Assembly: GCF_032444005.1 (NCBI RefSeq)
Contig: NC_091282.1
Location: 655,898,001-655,962,000, forward strand
Reading direction: 5' to 3'
Length of the DNA stretch: 64,000 nucleotides
From: Ranitomeya imitator
Lineage: Eukaryota
The notes under the pieces are model-generated. The model was not told where the DNA came from and searched no databases. It saw only the letters and a program-made list of their open reading frames with translations. Position 1 is the stretch's first letter, and each line of letters opens with the position of its first letter. The position numbers were made by a program, and so were the translations under genes. This document shows positions 25-18,699 of the stretch, piece after piece.

Positions 25-3000
25 CAGGGCCGCCATCAGGGCATGACGGCCGTGACTGGCGTATGGGGCCCGGTGGGCAGAGGGGGCCCGCATCGGGCCC
101 TGTCTCATCTGCTCACCGGGACCCTACCGGCAGCCGCAGGCTAACCGGGCCCTTAGCGCTGACGCTGCAGCTGTTTAAAGCTATTGACGTGCGGGCGCGG
201 GCCCGCACGTCAATAGTTAACAGCCGCCAGCCAATCTGAGGCTGGCAGCTGACGTCAGCCGCAGCGTGCGTGCATGTCGCCGGCGTCTGACGTCATTATC
301 AGTTGCCGGCGAGTGCACGCTGCAGCTGCGTGGAGACTTCGCCCGCCGCAGGAGCATGGCCAGGTAAGAAGAACTTCTTTTTTTTTTTTTTTTCTTGAGA
401 GCGGCGATCCGGGGGGCCCAGGGAAGAACACTGGACACAGAGGCAAAAGCTGGACAGAGATGGGGCAGAGTGCTGGACAGAGATGGGGCAGAGTGCTGGA
501 CAGAGATGGGGCAGAGTGCTGGACAGAGATGAGGCAGAGTGCTGGACAGAGATGGGGCAGAGTGCTGGACAGAGATGGGACAGAGTGCTGGACAGAGATG
601 GAGCAGAGTGCTGGACACAGGGGAAAAGTGCTGGACAGAGATGGGGCAGAGTGCTGGACAGAGATGGGACAGAGTGCTGGACAGAGATGGGGCAGAGTGC
701 TGGACAGAGATGGGGCAGAGTGCTGGACACAGGGGCAAAGTGCTGGACAGAGATGGGGCAGAGTGCTGGACAGAGATGAGGCAGAGTGCTGGACAGAGAT
801 GGGGCAGAGTGCTGGACAGAGATGGGGCAGAGTGCTGGACAGAGATGGAGCAGAGTGCTGGACAGAGATGGGGCAGAGTGCTGGACAGAGATGGGACAGA
901 GTGCTGGACAGAGATGGGGCAGAGTGCTGGACACAGGGGAAAAGTGCTGGACAGAGATGGGGCAGAGTGCTGGACAGAGATGGGACAGAGTGCTGGACAG
1001 AGATGGGGCAGAGTGCTGGACAGAGATGGGGCAGAGTGCTGGACACAGGGGCAAAGTGCTGGACAGAGATGGGGCAGAGTGCTGGACAGAGATGGGGCAG
1101 AGTGCTGGACACAGGGGCAAAGTGCTGGACAGAGATGGGGCAGAGTGCTGGACAGAGATGGGGCAGAGTGCTGGACACAGGGGCAAAGTGCTGGACAGAG
1201 ATGGGGCAGAGTGCTGGACAGAGATGGGGCAGAGTGCTGGACAGAGATGGGGCAGAGTGCTGGACAGAGATGGGGCAGAGTGCTGGACAGAGATGGGGCA
1301 GAGTGCTGGACAGAGATGGGGCAGAGTGCTGGACAGAGATGGGGCAGAGTGCTGGACAGAGATGGGGCAGAGTGCTGGACACGGGAAAAGTGCTGGACAG
1401 AGATGGGGCAGAGTGCTGGACAGAGATGGGACAGAGTGCTGGACAGAGATGGGGCAGAGTGCTGGACAGAGATGGGGCAGAGTGCTGGACAGAGATGGGG
1501 CAGAGTGCTGGACAGAGATGGGACAGAGTGCTGGACAGAGATGGGGCAGAGTGCTGGACACAGGGGAAAAGTGCTGGACAGAGATGGGGCAGAGTGCTGG
1601 ACAGAGATGGGACAGAGTGCTGGACAGAGATGGGGCAGAGTGCTGGACAGAGATGGGGCAGAGTGCTGGACACAGGGGCAAAGTGCTGGACAGAGATGGG
1701 GCAGAGTGCTGGACAGAGATGGGGCAGAGTGCTGGACACAGGGGCAAAGTGCTGGACAGAGATGGGGCAGAGTGCTGGACAGAGATGGGGCAGAGTGCTG
1801 GACAGAGATGGGGCAGAGTGCTGGACAGAGATGGGGCAGAGTGCTGGACAGAGATGGGGCAGAGTGCTGGACAGAGATGGGGCAGAGTGCTGGACACAGG
1901 GGCAAAGTGCTGGACAGAGATGGGGCAGAGTGCTGGACAGAGATGGGGCAGAGTGCTGGACAGAGATGGGGCAGAGTGCTGGACAGAGATGGGGCAGAGT
2001 GCTGGACAGAGATGGGGCAGAGTGCTGGACAGAGATGGGGCAGAGTGCTGGACAGAGATGGGGCAGAGTGCTGGACAGAGATGGGGCAGAGTGCTGGACA
2101 GAGATGGGACAGAGTGCTGGACAGAGATGGGGCAGAGTGCTGGACACAGGGGAAAAGTGCTGGACAGAGATGGGGCAGAGTGCTGGACAGAGATGGGACA
2201 GAGTGCTGGACAGAGATGGGGCAGAGTGCTGGACAGAGATGGGGCAGAGTGCTGGACACAGGGGCAAAGTGCTGGACAGAGATGGGGCAGAGTGCTGGAC
2301 AGAGATGGGGCAGAGTGCTGGACACAGGGGCAAAGTGCTGGACAGAGATGGGGCAGAGTGCTGGACAGAGATGAGGCAGAGTGCTGGACAGAGATGGGGC
2401 AGAGTGCTGGACAGAGATGGGGCAGAGTGCTGGACAGAGATGGGGCAGAGTGCTGGACAGAGATGGGGCAGAGTGCTGGACAGAGATGGGACAGAGTGCT
2501 GGACAGAGATGGGGCAGAGTGCTGGACACAGGGGAAAAGTGCTGGACAGAGATGGGGCAGAGTGCTGGACAGAGATGGGACAGAGTGCTGGACAGAGATG
2601 GGGCAGAGTGCTGGACAGAGATGGGGCAGAGTGCTGGACACAGGGGCAAAGTGCTGGACAGAGATGGGGCAGAGTGCTGGACAGAGATGGGGCAGAGTGC
2701 TGGACACAGGGGCAAAGTGCTGGACAGAGATGGGGCAGAGTGCTGGACAGAGATGGGGCAGAGTGCTGGACAGAGATGGGGCAGAGTGCTGGACAGAGAT
2801 GGGGCAGAGTGCTGGACTTAGATGGGGCAGAGAGCTGGACAGAGATGGGGCAGAGTGCTGGACAGAGATGGGGCAGAGTGCTGGACAGAGATGGGGCAGA
2901 GTGCTGGACAGAGATGGGGCAGAGTGCTGGACAGAGATGGGGCAGAATGCTGGACAGAGATGGAGAGGGGTGCTGGACAGAGATGGGGCAGGATTGGACA

Positions 3001-4539
3001 AACATGGGGCAGAGTGCTGGACACAGATGGGGCAGGATTGGAAACAGATGGGGCAGGATTGGAAACAGATGGGGCAGAATGGAGACAGATGGGGCAGGAT
3101 TGGAAACAGATGGGGCAGGATTGGAAACAGATGGGGCAGAGTGCTGGACACAGATGGGGCAGGATTGGAAACAGATGGGGCAGGATTGGAAACAGATGGG
3201 GCAGAATGGAGACAGATGGGGCAGGATTGGAAACAGATGGGGCAGGATTGGAAACAGATGGGGCAGAGTGCTGGACACAGATGGGGCAGGATTGGAAACA
3301 GATGGGGCAGAATGGAGACAGATGGGGCAGGATTGGAGACAGATGGGGCAGGATGGATACGATGGAGACAGATGGGGCAGAATGGAGACAGATGGGGCAG
3401 GATTGGAAACAGATGGGGCAGGATGGATATGATGGAGACAGATGGGGCAGGATGGGGAGATTATATGGGGCAGAATGGATACTCATGAGGGCAGGATGGG
3501 AGAACATATGGCTGGAGCCTGGAATGAGACACACGGGGGCTAGGATGGCGAATATTACCATAGGGGCTAATTAAGGGATATTATTATTGCAGTGATGCAT
3601 TTATTTTATTTTTTGAGTATACTGTTTTAAATGGGGGGCGGTCCTCTTACTGTGTAGAGTGATACTATGTCGCCTTCTTCATGTGGTGTAATGTAGAAGT
3701 TGGGAAAATTAAGTAATGTGTTCTACAAGCGGAACTCGAGATAACTGTGTTATTTCCTGCAGAGACGAGTCCTGCCTGGATGAAGTGATGGCGGTCTGTG
3801 CTGGATGAAAGATGAAGGACTTCACCTAGAGACGTCACTGGTGAGTCAGTGTTACCTATACACTGACACTATACACTGTATACTATATACAGAGGTCCTG
3901 TGTACAATGTCACCAGTGATCACTGTATTACCTCTACACAGACACTGCATACTAATTACAGATCTCCTGTGTATAATGGCACTGATGGTGATAGTATTGT
4001 GGGTTTTTTTTTTATTACTGATCAGTATTGTAGTATTCAGTCATTGGTGGTATTATGTGGTCTGGTCATGATGTAGCGGTATTTGTTCCTTGTATTTTAT
4101 ATTATTCGATCACTGTGGTGGTAATATGTCATCTGGTCATAGTGTTGTGGTATTTGTTCCTTGTATGTAGTATTATAGGTCATTTTAAAAATTGAAAAAT
4201 AAATAAAAATATACCTAAATTGTATTGCATATTTTAACAAATATTTAATAGGTTACAGCAGAGTAGGGCCTGGCCAAAAGTGTCTACCGTGTTATGGTGG
4301 CGGCTTAAAAAATCTTTTGGCCAAAACAAAAGCTGCTGTTATATGTGTGATCTGGTGATGGGAACTGTCAATGTGTGATAGGTGAAAAGTGGAGATTTTC
4401 CAAGAGAGAGCGGTGGGACTGTGGACAGTTCGAGGGGTGGAGCCTGGAGGCGGGGCTGGGGTGGAGCCTGGGCGGAGTCTCAAGGGGGCCCCGAAAATTT
4501 TGCCAGTATGGGGCCCCAAAATTTCTAATGGCAGCCCTG
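25..4539. mobile_element. Non-autonomous hAT-type DNA transposon carrying a 3-kb minisatellite
   Basis: Imperfect 15-bp TIRs CAGGGCCGCCATCAG (25-39) / CTAATGGCAGCCCTG (4525-4539) and a perfect 8-bp TSD TTTGTAAC (17-24, 4540-4547). An 8-bp TSD with CAG termini is typical of hAT. No transposase visible. Confidence 0.8.
430..3480. repeat. Minisatellite, 23-bp unit GGACAGAGATGGGGCAGAGTGCT with 20-bp variant GGACACAGGGGCAAAGTGCT; shifts to GGAAACAGATGGGGCAGGATT-type units after ~2990
   Basis: Tandem units read directly. The unit has no stop codon in any frame, which explains the 600-1050 aa ORFs on both strands. Confidence 0.97.
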
Positions 4540-4547
4540 TTTGTAAC

Positions 4548-4911
4548 ATTAGATCTTTTTACTATTGATGCTGCATACGCAGCATCAATAGTAAAAAGTT
4601 GGTCACACAGGGTTAATAGCTGCGTAACCGGAGTGCGTTACACCGCGCTCCGGTAACGCTGGCATTAACCCTGTGTGAGGGCCGACTGGATGACTGGAGG
4701 GGAGTATGGAGCGGGCACTGATTGCGGGGAGGAAAGAGCGGCCATATTGCCGCCGGACTGTGGCCGTCGCTGATTGGTCGTGACAATGGTCGTGGGCGTT
4801 TTGCCACAACCAATCAGCGACTTGGATTCCATGACAGACAGAGGCCGCGACCAATGAATATCCGGGACAGACGGAAAGACGGAAGTGACCCTTAGACAAT
4901 TATATAGTAGA
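4548..4911 (-). mobile_element. 5' part of a non-autonomous Helitron-like element, same family as 53102-54151; interrupted by the hAT at 25-4539 and continuing past the window start
   Basis: Reverse complement matches 53102-53430 (CCCTTAGACAATTAT, CCAATCAGCGAC, GCAGCATCAATAGTAAAAA). On the minus strand it starts with TC directly after an A (4912). Confidence 0.6.
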
Positions 4912-4985
4912 TGATATTACCCTATGTACAAGAATATAAATACTATGATATTGCTCTATATGTTTTTTTGTTTTCCTAGGTTTGA

Positions 4986-5255
<270 letters not shown>

Positions 5256-7689
5256 TAAGGTTACTATGGCCCCTGTCAAAGGATAAAGAAAAAAAAATGT
5301 GATTGCGTCCCCAACAACATTCACTGGTGGCCTTCGAGAAATCAGCTTAGGGGTTGGGATGGGGATTCATGTTTTTTATTTCTCAAAGCCGAATTGTGTG
5401 GGATGTTTACATCAACTGTGAAGCTTTGTGACCAACAAGCACTTAAGTGGCACAAAGCTGACATAGATTTGCCAATACAAAAAAAAATGAAGCCTCGTTA
5501 ACGCACTTTTTGTGCAAGCCTACGCCGGAATGTTCAGTGACTGTCGTCGCTACTTTGTGAGTTCTGTGTTGATGTTGTAAGGTGAGCGTCGAAAAAATAA
5601 AAAAGAGCAGATTCATTTTTATGTAGATGTAAGGTTAGAAACGTTCTGGGCTTCAGTCTTATGCTTTGAATTGTACTTTAGAGGTATTCCAGGGGCTTTT
5701 TAAAATATTTTTTTTTAGTTTTGAAAAACTAAATCGAATTATAAAATGGAAATAGAACAGACAGTTATTGGACCAGAAATTGATCTATCGATATTAAAAA
5801 TGAAGACGATCCATAATTATGTTGACGTAAGGTTAGAAATGTTCTCTAATTTTTGAAAACACCAAAATGCCTCAAAAAATATTTCAAAAATTTTTGTAAA
5901 AAAACTATAGGATAAAAAAAAACTAAAACCGCTATTGGAACAGACACTGACCTAGAAATACTATGTTTACGAATTTGGAAGTTGTGGTGTTCTTATTCTT
6001 GACTATGCGAATGATTATCGGCACACCAAGTGCATCGAAATGCTAAACCAAAATCTCACCGCATATCTACAACAGCATCATCACCAATGCAAGACCAGCC
6101 AAAAACCTGGACACAGTTTTGGCAACACAATTCAAAGGGGTTGTTTCTCGAACCTTCCATGATCTTGTGACGGTGACTTTTTTCCAAAAAAGAAAAAAAT
6201 AGAGCATATTGTTAGATTCCAAGTTTGCCTTTTTTTTTTGACAAGTTGGGCATTTTTGAACAAATTTTTCTTCTATTATTTTTTTTTTAAAGAATCCTAC
6301 AAAAAAAACAAACCAAAAACGCTGTTATATGATGGTTACATTTACAATGTCTAATTTAGGGGACCAGTACCCTCAACTGACAGTTTTCAGTAAATATATG
6401 TCCTTCAAAATGCCAAATCAAAAGCATCTTTTCTTCAAACAATGCATTGTGCTGCTCCTCTTCTAACACTCCTAGAGATATATAAATAAATGAACAATTA
6501 GGTGATTCCTTTTTTCCCATTGTCCAAGGAGTGGGTTTCTACACTGTCTGACATTGATTGGCTATGTATCAGTTTGTGACCGGATGCGCTCCAGCGGAAT
6601 GGTGTGAAACTCGAAGGAAAACATGCGATTCCTATATAGACATCAGGAGAGCTGACTGTTCCTCTTTAAGCGCTGGGTGGAAATTTAAAGCGGGACCAGT
6701 CACTGCCAGGAATGATCCTTTTCGTGCCAAAGACGCAAGTTTGTCTGAGAAAAGAAAAAAAAAATGTCTACTGTTTCCATGGAAACTTGACATCCCGATT
6801 CAAAAGTGTTCTACCTTGTGATAACAGAGGAAGATAAGGCCTCGGGCGGCGCACTTCAGAATGTAATAGTATATACATGAAGGAAGATAAATACCAGCTC
6901 CCAAAAGTATCTGCTGAATCGTTCATGTGCTCCAGCATTATTTGTGTGTGTGTGCGCAACGTGAAGTATCCAATAAAAATGGAGATGCTTTTTCAGTGTC
7001 TTGGGGTCACTTTGGTTTACATACACTACTAGTCATAGATCCGTAAAAAGCCACCTACAGTCTGCTATGGGTCTGTACTGTACCTATAAAGTAGCATAAA
7101 TAGCAGCTAGTTCCAAGAGAGGGCACTGTATTATACAGTTTTATAGACCTCAGACTCCCTCCATTTACTATGAAAAGATACAAACTGACTAAAAAGGATC
7201 AGGAGTTTAGGACTAGGACTACTTATTATGGGGAGAAACTAGTAAAATGCAGCTGTTGATGGATCTTGCATTTTTATGAGAGCTCAACAGACTTACGCAT
7301 GGGATATTGAACAACACTAGTTATACAGGTGTAAGTAAAAGGAGCTGACCTGAGTTATACTAAGGTCCATCAACAGTGAACAGTTTACTTATAGATGGTT
7401 TACCTGTTACAAATTTGTGGTAATGTTTCCATTTTTCACAAACCACTTCTTTCACAGTCCCATGGTAGGTAAAACTTTTAGGACTCATTGAGTCTGAACA
7501 TCACAAAGTGTTGGCCAGGCTAGACAACACCACGCGTTGGACTGGAGCACCTTAGGCCCACCAGAGAAAATCATTATTGGGACCCACTATGTAGCTACAT
7601 AGAAATAGATACAAGACCACAAAGTGTGCAGTAAAACGCGCTAATATCAGGGAATACTATAAGGTAGTACACGTCTTAATTATGTAGCA

Positions 7690-9167: not shown

Positions 9168-9711
9168 GGCTGCCGTCACACTAGCAGTATTTGGTCAGTA
9201 TTTTACATCAGTATTTGTAAGCCAAAACCAGGAGTGGATGATAAATGCAGAAGTGGTGCATATGTGCACACGTCAGGATTTTTTCCTGACAAAATCCTGA
9301 GAATTCTGCCAGAAATCCGCGTGCTTTTTTCGCGGAATTTGCGCGTTTTTTTGCGCGGATTTTTTGCGTTTTTTTTTTTCCGGAATGACCTTTTTGATAG
9401 CAAATCCGCAAAAAATCCGGAAAAAGATAGAGCATGTCCGGATTTTTTGCAGTATGCGTTTTTTTTGCGGAAAAAAACGCTAACATCTGCACAAAAAATG
9501 CGGAATGCATTCTAAAACATAGGATGCATAATGTTAGCGTTTTTTGACCGGATTTATAGCGTTTTTATAGCGAAATTCCGCAAAAAAAACGCTAAAAATC
9601 CTGACGTGTGCACATACCCCTATACTTTTCCTCTAATTGTTCCACTCCTGGTTTTGGCTTACAAATACTGATGTAAAATACTGACCAAATACTGCTAGTG
9701 TGACGGCAGCC
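9168..9711. mobile_element. PIF/Harbinger-type MITE with a second MITE nested at ~9261-9620
   Basis: Long TIRs beginning GGCTGCCGTCACACTAGCAGTATTTGG; 3-bp TSD TTA (9165-9167, 9712-9714). Inner arms TATGTGCACACGTCAGG / CCTGACGTGTGCACATA. Confidence 0.85.
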
Positions 9712-10316: not shown

Positions 10317-11080
10317 ACTATCTACATGGATAGAATCCGATATTCATCTAAATTTCTAGGTGTTTCATGTGGGATCCATGTTATCTCTGTGAGTGTGTTT
10401 ATGCTGGCAGGTATGCCAGCAGTTGTCAGTGCCTGGGCCCACCGGAGAATCCTCCGGTTCTCCAGTGAGCCAGTCCGAACCTGACGCCACAAATTCTCAC
10501 TTTGTTAATTGGACACAGGGGGTCTTGATAGTCCAGCTCTCTTATTTCTAGCTAAGTGATTGAGAGGTCAATATATGTGTCCCTTGTCGAATCCTCTGAG
10601 GCTGGGCAATCAATCCCTAAGTCAAGAATGAGTCACTCTTCCAATCTTCAAAGCCAGGCTATCAAACCCAAAGCCAAGAATAAATCATCAGTCCAAACCT
10701 CTGGGGCCAGGCTATCGATTCCTAAGCCAAGAATGAGCTAGCAGTCCAATCCTCTGAGGCTGGGTTATTGTTTCCTAAGCCAATAATGAATCACCAGACC
10801 AACCCCCTGAGGCTGGGTTATCGATTAGTAAGCCAAGAATGAGTCATCAGTTCTAGCCTCTCAGGCAGGGTTAGGCTGGGTTCACATTGCTTATGGCAGT
10901 CCGTTAGGTGGACTGCGTCCCACCGTGGCATATTGTGGTGTAAGTAAAGAAGCTGCGGAGACACCATCACGTGTTTCTCGACGCAAGCAGTGAATAGCCA
11001 GGCCTTTCCCCGGGAAGGAACAACCACGGGAAGGGCAGCATCCTATGAAGGAAAGCCACCTATGCCAAGCATGGTATCCA

Positions 11081-11125
11081 TCCACAGACAGCTGTTTCGG
11101 GGTTTTTGCCCCTCATCAGTGTGGA
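11081..11125 (-). ncRNA. Type I hammerhead ribozyme, copy 1 (predicted cleavage after GUC, between 11087 and 11086)
   Basis: Minus strand UCCACA-CUGAUGA-GGGG-CAAAAA-CCCC-GAAAC-AGCU-GUC-UGUGGA: 6-bp stem I, full consensus core, 4-bp stem II with 6-nt loop, palindromic minimal helix III. Confidence 0.92.
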
Positions 11126-11430
11126 GTAGGAATCTGGCTATTAGGAGCAGTGCCTAGTAAAAAGGCTATAAAGGCACAGATGATTGGCCTCGGGGAGACC
11201 AAAACATCCAACACCGCGGAGACACCATCACGTGTTCCTCAACGCAGTGATTCCAGAACACTGCCCCCATCCCTTATGGGAAATATGCAGATGCATGTAA
11301 AGAAGCTGCGGAGACACCATCACGTGTTTCTCGACGCAAGCAGTGAATAGCCAGGCCTTTCCCCGGGAAGGAACCACGGGAAGGGCAGCATCCTATGAAG
11401 GAAAGCCACCTATGCCAAGCATGGTATCCA

Positions 11431-11475
11431 TCCACAGACAGCTGTTTCGGGGTTTTTGCCCCTCATCAGTGTGGA
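11431..11475 (-). ncRNA. Type I hammerhead ribozyme, copy 2 (predicted cleavage between 11437 and 11436)
   Basis: Identical 45-nt motif exactly 350 bp from copy 1. Confidence 0.92.
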
Positions 11476-12956
11476 GTAGGATTCTGGCTATTAGGAGCAG
11501 TGCCTAGTAAAAAGGCTATAAAGGCACAGATGATTGGCCTCGGGGAGACCAAAACATCCAACACCGCGGAGACACCATCACGTGTTTCTCAACGCAGTGA
11601 TTCCAGAACACTGCCCCCATCCCTTATGGGAAATATGCAGATGCATGTAAAGAAGCTGCGGAGACACCATCACGATGCTGCCCTTCCCGTGGTTGTTCCT
11701 TCCCGGGGAAAGGCCTGGCTATTCACTGCTTGCGTCGAGAAACACGTGATGGTGTCTCCGCAGCTTCTTTACATGCATCTGCATATTTCCCATAAGGGAT
11801 GGGGGCAGTGTTCTGGAATCACTGCGTTGAGAAACACGTGATGGTGTCTCCGCGGTGTTGGATGTTTTGGTCTCCCCGAGGCCAATCATCTGTGCCTTTA
11901 TATTGTGGTGTAACGCAGTCCGTTAATGCTGCCATTAACCCCCATTATCGAGCGCATCGCCAACGCATGCCATAATGGGCATGCGCTAGCGATGTGCCGT
12001 CATTCTGTGACGGACCCTTGGACACGTGCTGCAGCGTTTCCGGGTCCGTCACCGCTAGTGCAGATAGAGCATCTGCGCTAGTGCGATCGCATACCGTGAT
12101 CTTTTTCGGCACTTGCATTAACGCAGTCTGTTTAACGCATGCATTGAACGGACTGCAGTAACGCAATGTGAACCCAGCCTTATCGATACCTAAGCCATGA
12201 AGGAGTCACTGGTATAACCTTCTGAGGTCAGGTTATTGATCTCCAAGAGCAAGAATGAATCAGCAGTTCAAGCCTCCGATGTTGGTTTATCAATCCCTAA
12301 GCTAAGAATTAGTCACTTGTCTAACCCTCTGAGGCCGGACTATTAATCCACAAGGCAGGACTAAGTCAGTGGTCTAACCTTAAGAGGTTGGTTTATCGAC
12401 CCCAAGCCAAGAATTAGTTTTCAGCTCAACAACCCAAGATCAGGTTATTGATGGTGGAGCAAAGAATGAGTCACCGGTTCAACCAGCTGATGTTGAGCTA
12501 TTGATCGCCTAGATAAGAATAATTCCCCTAAAGTCCCACCTCTACAAACTGAGCATGGCTCAACAGTCAACCCAATGAGATTTAGAGCTGATGAAAGGAC
12601 CGCGGATGTGTGAACAGTGCCTTGCAAGTGTCCACCAAATGTGGTCTACCGAAAAGGCCAAGACCATTGTTCTTGTGCACTGTACGCTGGCAGTAAAGTC
12701 CCATTCCCATAAATTCAACTACTCACAAAAGTCAAGTTTCTGACCCAATGCGCCAAATGCTAGAGTTCAGATTTTAAATGGCCTAAAACAGTGGGAAAAG
12801 TCTTGAAAGGATTTGGTTCAAGTTAAAATAAAATTAAGACTTTTTTGTCAATAGCAAAAATTTTGATGAATCAAAATTAGCTAATAACTAAAAGGGGGGG
12901 GGGGAGGGAGAAAGAGGACGATGATGAACTTTACATCAACCATCTTCAGCATGATT

Positions 12957-17131: not shown

Positions 17132-18530
17132 TTGGGGCTTCTGTTTCCAAACCCACCATCATTCATTACGCTTGCTCACGCTGCAAGAAAAAGTGGTCAG
17201 CAGGTCAGTCGTCACCCTTCTGCCCAGCAGGAAGCTTCCGAATCTCAGGATGAGTGCACTCCCCCTCCCCCCAGAGTGGGCTGTTGCTATGTCTCAGTCT
17301 CTGACTTGACTAAAGTATCCCAATCTCTGATCCAGGCGCTTGAACAACTTCCGCATCTAGCTACAGCCACCAGTGCTCCAACAGTCTCTCATGGTGAGTC
17401 GCACGCACCTGTTATCGACCCTCAGAAGAACGCTCCGGCCGGCCATTCTAGAAAGAGGTCCCTGTCTGGCTCCTTTTCCAGCTCTCCGGGTCCCTCAGCA
17501 GTTCCCAAGCTGCTCACCTCTTCCCAATTCCCCTCTTTGGAGGAGGACCTTGGGTCGGACACAGATTCTCAGTCCGGTTCTGACTGACTCAGACCAGACG
17601 TCTGGCATACAGGCTATTGTGGATAGTCTCATCTTGGCTATCTCCCAAACGCTTAAGCTTAAACAGGACGAGGTTCCCTCACAGGATCCTTCTGTCTCCT
17701 TCAAACGGGTCAAGCGTCCTACTCGCTCCTTTTCCAATCACGAGGAATTTGAGTCTACCCTGTCTAAGCACTGGGAACATCCTGAGAAGCGCTTCCCAGG
17801 TAGAAAACACCTGGACGTATTATACCCGTTTAGTGCTGACCTTCTTGCCAAATGGGCAGAATCTCCCAAGGTGGACCCCCCGGATTCTCATCCAAGACGT
17901 TCCTGTCCTTACCTGACGGTGCGTCGCTTAAAGACGCTACGGACAGATTGAGACTCTAGCCAAATCAGCTTTCGAGGCATCAGGAGCTTCCCTCTGCCCC
18001 AGTTTCGCCTCCACCTGGGTGGCAAAGGCCATTTCCGCCTGGGCCAAGATTCTTTGACGAGGCATTTTGGCTTCCGCTTCCCCACAGGAACTGGCTGATT
18101 TGGCGGACCAGATTGGCCACGCGGGCAAATATGTTTTGGCTGCCTCCTTGGATGCAGCGGCCTGTTCCGCAAGGGCTAGTAGCAACATCATTGCTATACG
18201 CCGCATTATTTGGCTCAAAGCATGGAGCGCAGATACAACTTCTAAGAAGTGTCTCATCAACCTAGCCTTTCAGGGTTCCAGACTCTTTGGCTCTCACTTA
18301 GACCAGATAATTTCTGATGCCACGGGAGAAAAAAGTACTTCCCTCCCTCACTCTAGACCAAAACGTTTCTTCACTTTCGTCAATTTTGGACCTCTGACTC
18401 CTCTTCCCAGCAGGAGCAACCTTCCGCTTCAGGAGAGCGGAGGAGACCCTCTTACAAGCCTGCCCCCAGATGGAGAACTAAGAGCCAACCTTTCAAGTCC
18501 TCTGGCTCCCATTCCGATAGATTTCGTTCC
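17132..18530 (+). pseudogene. DIRS gag-like ORF1 remnant (split across frames)
   Basis: Fragments such as LYPFSADLLAKWAESPKVDPP and AASLDAAACSARASSNIIAIRRIIWLKAWSAD parallel the homologous text in the second DIRS (31134-31934). Confidence 0.7.
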
Positions 18531-18699
18531 AAGTGACGGATCGCCCCCACCTGGAATGACTTCCAGGGTGGGAGGCAGACTTCTTTCCTTCAAGGAAGCC
18601 TGGCTGTCTGTAGTGAGCGACACCTAGGTCAGAGAGGTAGTTGCCTCCGGTTACAAGATCGAATTTTCTTCTCTTCCAGAAAATCGTTTCTTCTTCTCT

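What the first reader, a model, noticed from the sequence alone, without database searches (positions are those of the whole stretch)
10944..11899. Tandem hammerhead-ribozyme retroelement (retrozyme) with a 350-nt monomer
Seen: a 350-353-bp unit in tandem, each full copy carrying on the minus strand UCCACA-CUGAUGA-GGGG-CAAAAA-CCCC-GAAAC-AGCU-GUC-UGUGGA, a consensus-perfect type I hammerhead. The two GUC sites are exactly 350 nt apart. Established: tandem type I hammerheads spaced 150-400 nt define non-LTR retrozymes (newt satellite 2, schistosome Sm-alpha), whose multimeric transcripts self-cleave to monomers that can circularise. The 6-bp stem I, 4-bp stem II and CAAAAA loop resemble the Schistosoma ribozyme (CAAAUA loop). 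Inference: this is a protein-free, self-processing circular-RNA retroelement family in a frog. The class is known; I cannot tell from sequence alone whether this family is described.
Basis: partly seen in the sequence, partly recalled or inferred. Interest (0 to 1): 0.92.

Follow-up and report, generated by a model that had tools for sequence, protein, structure and literature searches.

The report
Hammerhead-ribozyme retrozyme insertion in a frog
This is a young, non-coding, 956-bp mobile-element insertion built from 350-bp repeats that each carry a textbook self-cutting hammerhead RNA motif; the class (animal "retrozymes") is already described, also in amphibians, so it is a good example of a known kind, not a discovery.

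Summary
Window 10944-11899 holds 2.1 tandem 350/353-bp units. Two identical, complete type I hammerheads lie on the minus strand, with cleavage sites exactly 350 nt apart. A strict descriptor found 0 such motifs in 300 shuffles.

The interpretation (non-LTR retrozyme) is supported.
- The insert is bounded by a perfect 14-bp target-site duplication.
- It has no coding capacity.
- It sits inside a 338-bp MITE, and other copies of that MITE lack it.
- Summed contig depth in one DNA run suggests roughly 10^4-10^5 units per genome.

The insert also ends in an inverted, 5'-truncated 226-bp copy placed head-to-head with the tandem part. A partial tandem plus an inverted 5'-truncated copy plus a long TSD is the published insertion signature of Penelope-like elements (PLEs), the proposed mobilisers of animal retrozymes.

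The middle unit differs from its neighbours at three sites. Depth suggests other genomic copies share these variants. This favours a heteromeric multimer RNA template over rolling-circle copying of one monomer circle.

Self-cleavage, circular RNA and transcription are not shown. The RNA-run contigs could be DNA carry-over, and Rfam thresholds are not met (HH9, 24.3 vs 52 bits).

The class is known (Cervera and de la Peña 2020; Li et al. 2026). This scan already holds 151 hammerhead notes on this genome.

The parts
10930..10943 (.). Left copy of the 14-bp target-site duplication (ATATTGTGGTGTAA)
   Evidence: Perfect direct repeat of 11900-11913, exactly abutting the element (family D8).
10944..11086 (-). 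Partial unit 0. It covers S1-140, where S is the hammerhead-sense monomer and S1 is the first base after the cut. This is the 353-type unit (it has the extra GTT). It forms the 3' end of the tandem part and abuts the left TSD.
   Evidence: BLAST of the monomer against the window; alignment of the pieces.
11081..11125 (-). Hammerhead ribozyme 1 (type I). The predicted cut is between 11087 (C17) and 11086.
   Evidence: Sequence; pattern match; strict descriptor with 0/300 shuffles; Rfam HH9 at 24.3 bits, E=0.0024, below the gathering score of 52.
11087..11436 (-). The one complete 350-nt monomer (unit 1), bounded by both predicted cleavage sites. It differs from the neighbouring pieces by lacking GTT at S62, by G at S200 and by U at S305.
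   Evidence: The fold of this monomer closes helix I, with MFE -134.7 kcal/mol and z = -3.84 against shuffles.
11431..11475 (-). Hammerhead ribozyme 2, identical in its 45 nt to ribozyme 1. The predicted cut is between 11437 and 11436.
11437..11674 (-). Partial unit 2 (S113-350). This is the 5'-truncated end of the tandem part.
11674..11899 (+). Inverted, 5'-truncated copy (S45-270, sense on the plus strand), placed head-to-head with the tandem part. It carries no hammerhead. Its 3' end abuts the right TSD, with 3 nt (ATA) shared between element and target.
   Evidence: Inverted repeats I1 (211 nt, 99%) and I2 (158 nt, 100%); BLAST; alignment.
11900..11913 (.). Right copy of the 14-bp target-site duplication
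   Evidence: family D8.
11517..11902 (.). Perfect 158-bp inverted arms (11517-11674 and 11745-11902) with a 70-nt spacer. A transcript through both arms would form a long hairpin.
   Evidence: pair I2.
10873..12180 (.). Host of the insertion: a MITE-like element, 338 bp without the insert, with perfect 18-bp terminal inverted repeats and flanked by TTA. It lies inside a degenerate 53-bp satellite.
   Evidence: Pair I9 and families D1/D2/D4; TRF. Contigs of other copies run from about 10916-10925 straight to about 11907-11912 without the retrozyme.

Best explanation
This is a young insertion of a non-autonomous, non-coding retroelement of the animal non-LTR retrozyme class.

What the sequence shows:
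- 2.1 tandem units of 350/353 bp with a canonical type I hammerhead at each unit junction on the minus strand.
- An inverted 5'-truncated copy abutting the 5' end of the tandem part.
- A 14-bp target-site duplication around the whole insert.
- A very large family of near-identical units elsewhere in the genome.

Inferred mechanism:
1. Minus-strand-sense multimeric RNA of the family was reverse-transcribed directly at a staggered chromosomal cut.
2. Both 3'-OH ends of the cut served as primers. In both the tandem part and the inverted part, the RNA-sense 3' end faces a TSD copy and the 5' ends meet in the middle.
3. This is what the reverse transcriptase/GIY-YIG endonuclease of a Penelope-like element does in vitro (it nicks and extends both strands). 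It is also the published anatomy of PLE insertions. A PLE is therefore the most likely mobiliser.
4. The template spanned two hammerhead sites and carried different variants in adjacent units. It was therefore more likely an uncleaved or partly cleaved heteromeric multimer (or a dimeric circle) than a single monomer circle copied round and round.

If the locus is transcribed from the minus strand, the two hammerheads should release one 350-nt RNA (11436 down to 11087). Helix III is only 2 bp with a palindromic AGCU loop. The ribozymes are therefore expected to cut mainly as a double hammerhead formed by two units. By analogy with axolotl retrozymes, a host tRNA ligase would then circularise the monomer.
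For: Hammerhead:
- All conserved core positions are present, with a 6-bp helix I, a 4-bp helix II, and a 2-bp helix III capped by a palindromic tetraloop.
- This is the published definition of the canonical metazoan type I hammerhead (PMC4209133).
- Helix III as a hairpin costs +2.4 kcal/mol. The 8-bp intermolecular ACAGCUGU duplex gives -12.5 kcal/mol.

Insertion:
- A perfect 14-bp TSD.
- Paralogous MITE copies without the insert.
- No ORF with a Pfam match.

Family size:
- In DNA run X22 the unique flank has depth 9.5. The units have summed depth 3x10^5 to 1.25x10^6.
- 383-nt contigs equal 353 + 30, a closed k-mer cycle.

PLE signature:
- Partial tandem plus an adjacent inverted 5'-truncated copy matches the description in PMC8557442.
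- PLE protein cleaves and extends both strands and prefers ATT (PMC11167929). The TSD begins ATATT.
- Neither outer end has a poly(A) tail.
- Contigs from other copies end at the same sense-strand positions as this insert's two outer ends: S137 and S148 near S140, and S269 and S273 near S270 (loose ends at 11766, 11777, 11168 and 11903). This fits fixed 3' ends, though only four boundary places were seen.

Heteromeric template:
- The only three differences among the four pieces all lie in unit 1.
- Both unit 1's states (no GTT, S200 G) and unit 2's state at S305 (A) have depths of about 170 to 7,000. That is far above the single-copy 9.5, so other copies appear to share them.

Literature: PMC7229834 and 10.64898/2026.07.22.740005 describe the class, its dimer-dependent ribozymes in amphibians and its link to PLEs.
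Against: - No Rfam family reaches its curated score. The best is HH9 at 24.3 bits against 52.
- Cleavage was not tested. 8 of 9 Xenopus retrozyme dimers did not cleave in vitro.
- Transcription is not shown. In the RNA runs the retrozyme-to-MITE depth ratio (about 1-3) is no higher than in DNA (about 4-6). With this copy number, a trace of DNA would give the same contigs.
- All runs were contigs without strand or read ends, so circles cannot be told from tandem DNA.
- No PLE gene is in the window. The unit could not be compared with any PLE pseudo-LTR.
- The 30-40-bp PLE 'tail' was not recognised.
- GC is 52%, not below 50% as described for the class.
- Summed contig depth is only a rough proxy for copy number. 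The variant-sharing argument rests on it.
- The pre-insertion allele of this exact site was not observed.
Confidence: 0.8

Rival explanations
1. It is the same retrozyme, but mobilised by a LINE (L1-like twin priming) rather than by a Penelope-like element.
For: A 14-bp TSD and a 5' inversion are also the classic marks of L1 twin priming (my own knowledge, not tested here). No PLE gene lies in the window.
Against: Neither outer end has a poly(A) or A-rich tail. The partial-tandem organisation is typical of PLEs. PLE protein has been shown to prime on both strands. Retrozymes co-occur with PLEs, and their units group with PLE pseudo-LTRs in frogs.
Confidence: 0.1
2. It is not a separate non-autonomous family. 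It is a heavily 5'-truncated insertion of an autonomous PLE of which only pseudo-LTR sequence was copied.
For: PLE insertions are mostly 5'-truncated and carry hammerheads in their pseudo-LTRs. Homology to a pseudo-LTR could not be tested.
Against: - The period is 350/353 bp with nothing between successive hammerheads. A tandem PLE has a period of several kb.
- The unit closes on itself as a 353+30 contig cycle.
- The unit is present at roughly 10^4-10^5 copies.
- PLE hammerheads are described as minimal variants lacking helix III and the loop contacts. This one is canonical.
Confidence: 0.06
3. It is a piece of satellite DNA moved or copied at the DNA level (capture of an array fragment or extrachromosomal circle at a break, with fold-back). 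No RNA intermediate was involved.
For: The family is satellite-like in abundance. Adjacent units differ, as they would in a genomic array. An inverted duplication can arise by fold-back repair.
Against: - A perfect 14-bp TSD at the exact borders of the homology points to a staggered endonuclease cut.
- Both outer ends are sense-strand 3' ends, at positions where other copies also end.
- The inverted piece starts at S45, not where the tandem part stops (S113). It is therefore not a simple snap-back.
Confidence: 0.04

Closest known systems
Axolotl non-LTR retrozymes (Rtz_353 with HHR_Amex2; Cervera and de la Peña 2020, PMC7229834)
   Same: - Amphibian host and a non-coding tandem unit of about 350 nt (353 nt in the major variant here).
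- A type I hammerhead with a 2-bp AC/GU helix III capped by a palindromic tetraloop.
- Expected to cut as a dimer.
- Of the order of 10^5 copies.
   Different: - Helix I, helix II and loop 2 have different sequences. The axolotl construct reads CTGATGA-TGCC-CACTA-GGCT-GAAAC-ACGT-GTA.
- Helix II here is four clean G-C pairs, without the U-U mismatch.
- By eye the rest of the unit shows no likeness. No alignment was run.
- RNA circles were demonstrated there, not here.
Xenopus non-LTR retrozyme families (Li, Clavereau and Pollet 2026, bioRxiv 10.64898/2026.07.22.740005)
   Same: Frog retrozymes in tandem dimers or multimers. Amphibian consensus length averages 316 bp. They are proposed non-autonomous derivatives of PLE pseudo-LTRs.
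   Different: - This genome has a sequence piece longer than 584 Mb, which in my knowledge is more than any Xenopus chromosome. It is therefore probably another anuran.
- The published primers do not match the element.
- That paper argues from phylogeny and co-occurrence. In the text I read, it does not describe the insertion anatomy (TSD plus inverted 5' copy) seen here.
Penelope-like element insertions (Craig et al. 2021, PMC8557442; Frangieh et al. 2024, PMC11167929)
   Same: Partial tandem, an adjacent inverted 5'-truncated copy, a long TSD in AT-rich target sequence, a hammerhead in the repeat, and evidence of priming from both target strands.
   Different: There is no RT/GIY-YIG ORF. The unit is 350 bp, not several kb. 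The hammerhead is canonical, not the minimal PLE type. No 'tail' was recognised.
Rfam Hammerhead_HH9 (RF02275), the conserved intronic hammerhead of amniotes
   Same: Type I topology, a 6-bp helix I preceded by UAC, a 4-bp helix II and an identical CAAAAA loop 2 (alignment).
   Different: It scores 24.3 bits against a gathering score of 52. Helix III is much shorter. It is a high-copy repeat, not a single conserved intronic site.
Newt satellite 2 and Schistosoma Sm-alpha hammerhead repeats
   Same: [quoted passage not shown]
   Different: No sequences of these were compared here. The likeness rests on published descriptions only.

Membership tests
Canonical metazoan type I hammerhead ribozyme | Conserved catalytic core: C3 U4 G5 A6 N7 G8 A9, G12 A13 A14, an A15.1-U16.1 pair, and H17 at the cleavage site | tested here: met
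   Both copies read CUGAUGA ... GAA A..U C. The strict descriptor gave 0/300 shuffles.
Canonical metazoan type I hammerhead ribozyme | Open helix I of about 6 bp, closed helix II of about 4 bp, and helix III of 1-2 bp capped by a 2-4-nt palindromic loop (PMC4209133) | tested here: met
   Helix I is UCCACA/UGUGGA. Helix II is GGGG/CCCC. Helix III is AC/GU with loop AGCU, and ACAGCUGU is a perfect palindrome.
Canonical metazoan type I hammerhead ribozyme | Loop 1 / loop 2 nucleotides that make the tertiary contact | tested here: inconclusive
   Loop 2 (CAAAAA) and the UAC bulge before helix I match the HH9 consensus. A 3-4-bp distal extension of helix I exists. No three-dimensional or covariation test was done.
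Canonical metazoan type I hammerhead ribozyme | Rfam curated gathering score for a hammerhead family | tested here: not met
   No hit at gathering thresholds. The best hit in the clan is HH9 at 24.3 bits against 52, E=0.0024 on 1.2 kb.
Canonical metazoan type I hammerhead ribozyme | Self-cleavage 3' of C17 | not testable with these tools
   This needs in vitro transcription. Published frog dimers mostly failed, with 1 of 9 active.
Animal non-LTR retrozyme | Tandem repeats of about 170-400 nt with a type I hammerhead in every repeat junction | tested here: met
   2.1 copies of 350/353 bp. Both junctions carry the ribozyme.
Animal non-LTR retrozyme | No protein-coding capacity and no LTR | tested here: met
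   The longest in-unit ORF is 101 aa on the antisense strand, with no Pfam match. PBS and PPT motifs were not searched for separately.
Animal non-LTR retrozyme | Target-site duplication longer than the 4 bp of plant LTR retrozymes | tested here: met
   A perfect 14-bp TSD.
Animal non-LTR retrozyme | Repeated, dispersed family in the genome | tested here: met
   Depth is about 3x10^5 to 1.25x10^6 against 9.5 for the unique flank in X22. Contigs with other flanks were seen. Depth is only a rough proxy. There is no second copy in this window.
Animal non-LTR retrozyme | Expressed as linear and circular monomer RNA | tested here: inconclusive
   RNA-labelled runs hold the unit at depth 600-4600. 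One 119-nt contig crosses the cleavage site. However, the runs are contigs, the strand is unknown, and DNA carry-over would suffice.
Animal non-LTR retrozyme | Low GC (<50%), a descriptive trait in PMC7229834 | tested here: not met
   The unit's GC is 52%. This trait is descriptive, not defining.
Penelope-like element (as mobiliser, not as member) | Insertion as a partial tandem with an adjacent inverted 5'-truncated copy | tested here: met
   against the description in PMC8557442.
Penelope-like element (as mobiliser, not as member) | ORF with a telomerase-like RT and a GIY-YIG endonuclease | tested here: not met
   None is in the element. None was found among the eight ORFs elsewhere in the window that were scanned against Pfam; the window's other ORFs of 130 aa or more were not scanned. 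The element is therefore non-autonomous.
Penelope-like element (as mobiliser, not as member) | Similarity of the unit to the pseudo-LTR of an autonomous PLE of the same genome | not testable with these tools
   No access to the rest of the genome or to Repbase/Dfam.

The most novel reading that the evidence does not exclude
This single insertion may record how animal retrozymes are actually copied. Target-primed reverse transcription would start from both strands of a 14-bp staggered cut, on a heteromeric multimer RNA that still spans intact hammerhead sites. It would start at two preferred internal sites (about S140 and S270). That would be direct anatomical evidence that retrozymes use Penelope-like machinery. 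It would also show that the monomer circle is not the (only) template, contrary to the rolling-circle model. In addition, the resulting perfect 158-bp hairpin would make each such insertion a built-in double-stranded RNA source.
Probability: 0.3. Interest if true: 0.45.

Novelty: new member of a known kind. Interest (0 to 1): 0.3.

Why it matters
The class has been known since newt satellite 2 (1987). It was defined as retrozymes in 2020 and surveyed in frogs in 2026, so the element itself is ordinary.

The locus is useful because it is an unusually clean specimen. It is young, has a perfect TSD and two intact ribozymes, and combines tandem, inverted and TSD features. That anatomy ties retrozymes to Penelope-like integration by structure, not only by co-occurrence or phylogeny. 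The unit variants also bear on whether circles or uncleaved multimers are the template.

It is also a practical annotation point. With 151 hammerhead notes in 242 scanned windows and an estimated 10^4-10^5 units of this family, these elements should be masked as a repeat class in this genome, not re-reported window by window.

Tried and rejected
- **Rfam.** Gathering thresholds gave nothing on the whole window. In E-value mode only a sub-threshold HH9 hit appeared, and for only one of the two copies. Clan competition hides the Hammerhead_1 score.
- **Literature by sequence.** Full-text search for the ribozyme sequence and the MITE terminal repeat found 0 papers.
- **Published primers.** The Xenopus retrozyme primers (Li et al., supplementary table 7) do not match the element. 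The best was 15 of 23 letters.
- **Earlier findings.** The search of earlier findings by sequence was blank.
- **PLE gene in the window.** Eight of the window's other ORFs of 130 aa or more were scanned against Pfam; none showed RT or GIY-YIG.
- **Double hammerhead by folding.** Unconstrained folding and cofolding do not produce the canonical core or the double hammerhead. Only explicit evaluation of helix III shows the dimer advantage. MFE folding is a poor judge of hammerhead cores.
- **RNA evidence.** I first read the high depth in RNA-labelled runs as expression. I withdrew that after the DNA run showed the copy number.
- **Conservation across species.** The unit is held at 99.7% identity in runs labelled with four other organisms. 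I considered this as conservation and set it aside. Depth there is only 18-57. The retrozyme-to-MITE ratio is the same as in organism A. No unique flank is present. Trace carry-over or low-pass data from close relatives explains it as well.
- **Constraint on the ribozyme.** Common variants (10% or more of depth) hit the 45-nt ribozyme once, in loop 2. They hit the rest of the unit at a similar density. No extra constraint can be claimed.
- **Junction microhomology.** 3 nt (ATA) are shared at the right junction. At the left junction the target's GTAA and the element's GTAA stand side by side without overlap. Nothing firm follows from this.
- **Homology to axolotl Ax353.** Only an eye comparison of the printed construct was made. 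An alignment would have required typing a long sequence, so it was left out.
- **Species.** It could not be identified, because organism names are coded.
Full report
**1. The observation**

Reading the minus strand of 10700-12200 shows the reported motif twice, letter for letter. Tandem Repeats Finder gives 10944-11674 as a period-350 array of 2.1 copies with 98% matches. The repeat finder gives spacings of 350 and 353.

A loose pattern search finds only the two sites 11087-11119 and 11437-11469 in the 64-kb window. My own strict descriptor required a 6-bp helix I, CUGANGA, a 4-bp helix II, GAA, an A15.1-U16.1 pair and H17. It finds the same two sites (11081-11125 and 11431-11475) and none in 300 dinucleotide shuffles, even with one helix I mismatch allowed.

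The two cleavage-site cytidines are at 11087 and 11437, so they are 350 nt apart.

Rfam does not endorse it at curated thresholds. There are no gathering-level hits in the window. In E-value mode the best hit is Hammerhead_HH9 at 24.3 bits against a gathering score of 52 (E=0.0024 on 1.2 kb). That alignment shows the same UAC / 6-bp helix I / 4-bp helix II / CAAAAA loop layout. The score is lost on the very short helix III and the outer helix I.

**2. Anatomy**

I call the hammerhead-sense monomer S, with S1 the first base after the cut. S is the reverse complement of 11087-11436. BLAST of the unit against the window and an alignment of the pieces give the following.

- On the minus strand, 11674 down to 10944 reads S113-350, then S1-350, then S1-140.
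- On the plus strand, 11674 up to about 11902 reads S45-270.

The insert is therefore a 2.08-unit tandem whose 5' end abuts, head-to-head, an inverted 5'-truncated copy. The inverted arms are 158 nt at 100% and 211 nt at 99%.

The whole insert is flanked by a perfect 14-bp direct repeat, ATATTGTGGTGTAA, at 10930-10943 and 11900-11913. Neither outer end has an A-tail.

Each unit also contains two copies of a 31-nt hairpin-forming repeat with a CACGTG centre, 92 nt apart.

There is no meaningful ORF. The longest within a unit is 101 aa on the antisense strand and has no Pfam match.

The 350-nt monomer folds with helix I closing the molecule. The MFE is -134.7 kcal/mol, with z = -3.84 against shuffles. 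This fits the "highly self-paired" circles described for the class.

**3. Surroundings**

The insert lies in a 338-bp MITE-like element with perfect 18-bp terminal inverted repeats (10873-10890 and 12163-12180) and flanked by TTA. That element interrupts a degenerate 53-bp satellite at a single TTA. The nesting is satellite, then MITE, then retrozyme.

Contigs from other MITE copies run from about 10916-10925 to about 11907-11912 without the retrozyme. The retrozyme is therefore an insertion, not part of the MITE. The exact pre-insertion allele of this copy was not seen.

**4. Family size and variants**

In a DNA run of the same organism (X22), the unique flank 10700-10850 has contig depth 9.5. 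The units have summed depths of 3x10^5 to 1.25x10^6. The MITE has about 6x10^4 to 1.8x10^5. The tool warns that this is not a copy number. As an order of magnitude it suggests 10^4-10^5 units.

The scan's own notes point the same way, though they are unchecked. There are 151 notes mentioning hammerheads in 242 windows of this genome, several with "14-bp TSD" and "5' inversion" or inverted ends.

Contigs of 383 nt (353 + 30) in two runs are closed k-mer cycles of a 353-nt unit. This means tandem or circular copies of the major variant.

The only differences among the four pieces of this insert are three, and all lie in unit 1:
- loss of GTT at S62;
- G at S200;
- U, where unit 2 has A, at S305.

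The depths at the minority states are roughly 7,000 (no GTT), 900 (S200 G) and 170 (S305 A, carried by unit 2). All are well above the single-copy 9.5. Other copies therefore appear to share these variants, so they are unlikely to be private mutations. If so, one cDNA copied units of different type in succession.

The one common variant inside the ribozyme is loop 2 CAAAAA to CAAAUA. It accounts for about a third of the depth at 11104.

**5. How it most likely works**

*Shown:* the structure described above.

*Inferred, integration.*
- In both the tandem part and the inverted part, the RNA-sense 3' end faces a TSD copy and the truncated 5' ends meet in the middle.
- That is what results if both 3'-OH ends of a 14-bp staggered cut prime reverse transcription of sense RNA.
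- The purified protein of a Penelope-like element does exactly this in vitro. It cleaves and extends both strands, prefers ATT, and initiates internally on the RNA (PMC11167929).
- The genomic hallmark of PLE insertions is a partial tandem with an adjacent inverted 5'-truncated copy (PMC8557442).
- Contigs of other family copies stop at S137, S148, S269 and S273, with differing flanks. These are close to this insert's outer ends at S140 and S270. That fits preferred 3' ends with variable 5' truncation, but only four boundary places were seen.
- A simple snap-back is unlikely, because the inverted piece begins at S45 whereas the tandem part stops at S113.

*Inferred, template.* It crossed two hammerhead sites and carried mixed unit types. 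An uncleaved or partly cleaved multimer, or a dimeric circle, therefore fits better than rolling-circle copying of a monomer circle, which is the model proposed for the class. Frangieh et al. likewise found unprocessed RNA to be the dominant substrate for their PLE.

*Inferred by analogy, RNA processing.*
- Minus-strand transcripts would be cut at both ribozymes and release the 350-nt unit 1.
- Helix III is unstable as a hairpin (+2.4 kcal/mol). Its palindrome gives a -12.5 kcal/mol duplex between two units.
- Double-hammerhead cleavage is therefore expected, as shown for axolotl retrozymes, which RtcB ligase then circularises (PMC7229834).
- None of this was tested here. Only 1 of 9 Xenopus dimers cleaved in vitro.

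**6. Transcription**

RNA-labelled runs hold the unit at depth 600-4600, against 0-6 for the unique flank. One perfect 119-nt contig crosses the cleavage site.

However, the retrozyme-to-MITE ratio in those runs (about 1-3) does not exceed the ratio in DNA (about 4-6). The data are strandless contigs. At this copy number a trace of DNA would be enough. Expression is therefore undecided.

The near-identical unit in runs labelled with other organisms has low depth, the same retrozyme-to-MITE ratio and no unique flank. I do not count it as conservation.

**7. Comparison and novelty**

The hammerhead meets the published definition of the canonical metazoan type I motif. The element meets the sequence-level definition of a non-LTR retrozyme, except for a GC of 52%.

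The closest characterised relatives in architecture are the axolotl Rtz_353/HHR_Amex2 elements. They share the 2-bp AC/GU helix III with a palindromic tetraloop, and the major unit here has the same 353-nt length. The helix and loop sequences differ, and by eye the body shows no likeness.

Frog retrozymes were catalogued in 2026 (57 Xenopus families). This genome has a sequence piece longer than 584 Mb, so by my knowledge of Xenopus chromosome sizes it is probably another anuran. I could not check whether this family is in Repbase or Dfam.

The two main retrozyme papers, in the text I could read, do not mention inverted copies. The PLE-type insertion anatomy and the mixed-unit observation are therefore small additions, not a new kind of element.

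**Verdict.** It is a new member of a known kind, of modest interest.

Noticed in passing
window 10873-10929 and 11914-12180: A 338-bp MITE-like element with perfect 18-bp terminal inverted repeats and flanked by TTA (my own association, untested: PIF/Harbinger-type elements duplicate TTA). It is present at about 10^4 copies by depth. The first 10 nt of its terminal repeat (AGGCTGGGTT) also occur in the surrounding 53-bp satellite unit.
   Followed up: partly
window 10586-10873 and 12181-12386: A degenerate 53-bp satellite (units 62-79% alike) split by the MITE. Its k-mers are single-copy in the DNA run (depth 9.5), so this array is locus-specific.
   Followed up: partly
window about 217-3574: A long short-period tandem array. 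BLAST seeds recur every 23/46 bp, and ORFs of 800-1050 aa are open in several frames on both strands.
   Followed up: no
window 18067-18627 (+): A 186-aa ORF with a borderline Pfam match to LAP2alpha (PF11560, 25.7 bits against a cut-off of 25, E=9e-6).
   Followed up: no
window 11216-11246, 11308-11338 (and the same in the other units): Each retrozyme unit carries two copies of a 31-nt hairpin-forming repeat centred on CACGTG, 92 nt apart. One observed 3' terminus (S140) lies 11 nt downstream of the first copy. Its function is unknown. It could be a protein-binding or promoter element.
   Followed up: partly
window 11517-11902: The head-to-head arrangement creates a perfect 158-bp inverted repeat with a 70-nt spacer. 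Any transcript through it would be a long hairpin and a possible small-RNA source.
   Followed up: no
window 9325-9377: A small 12/23-bp tandem repeat rich in TTTGCGCG.
   Followed up: no
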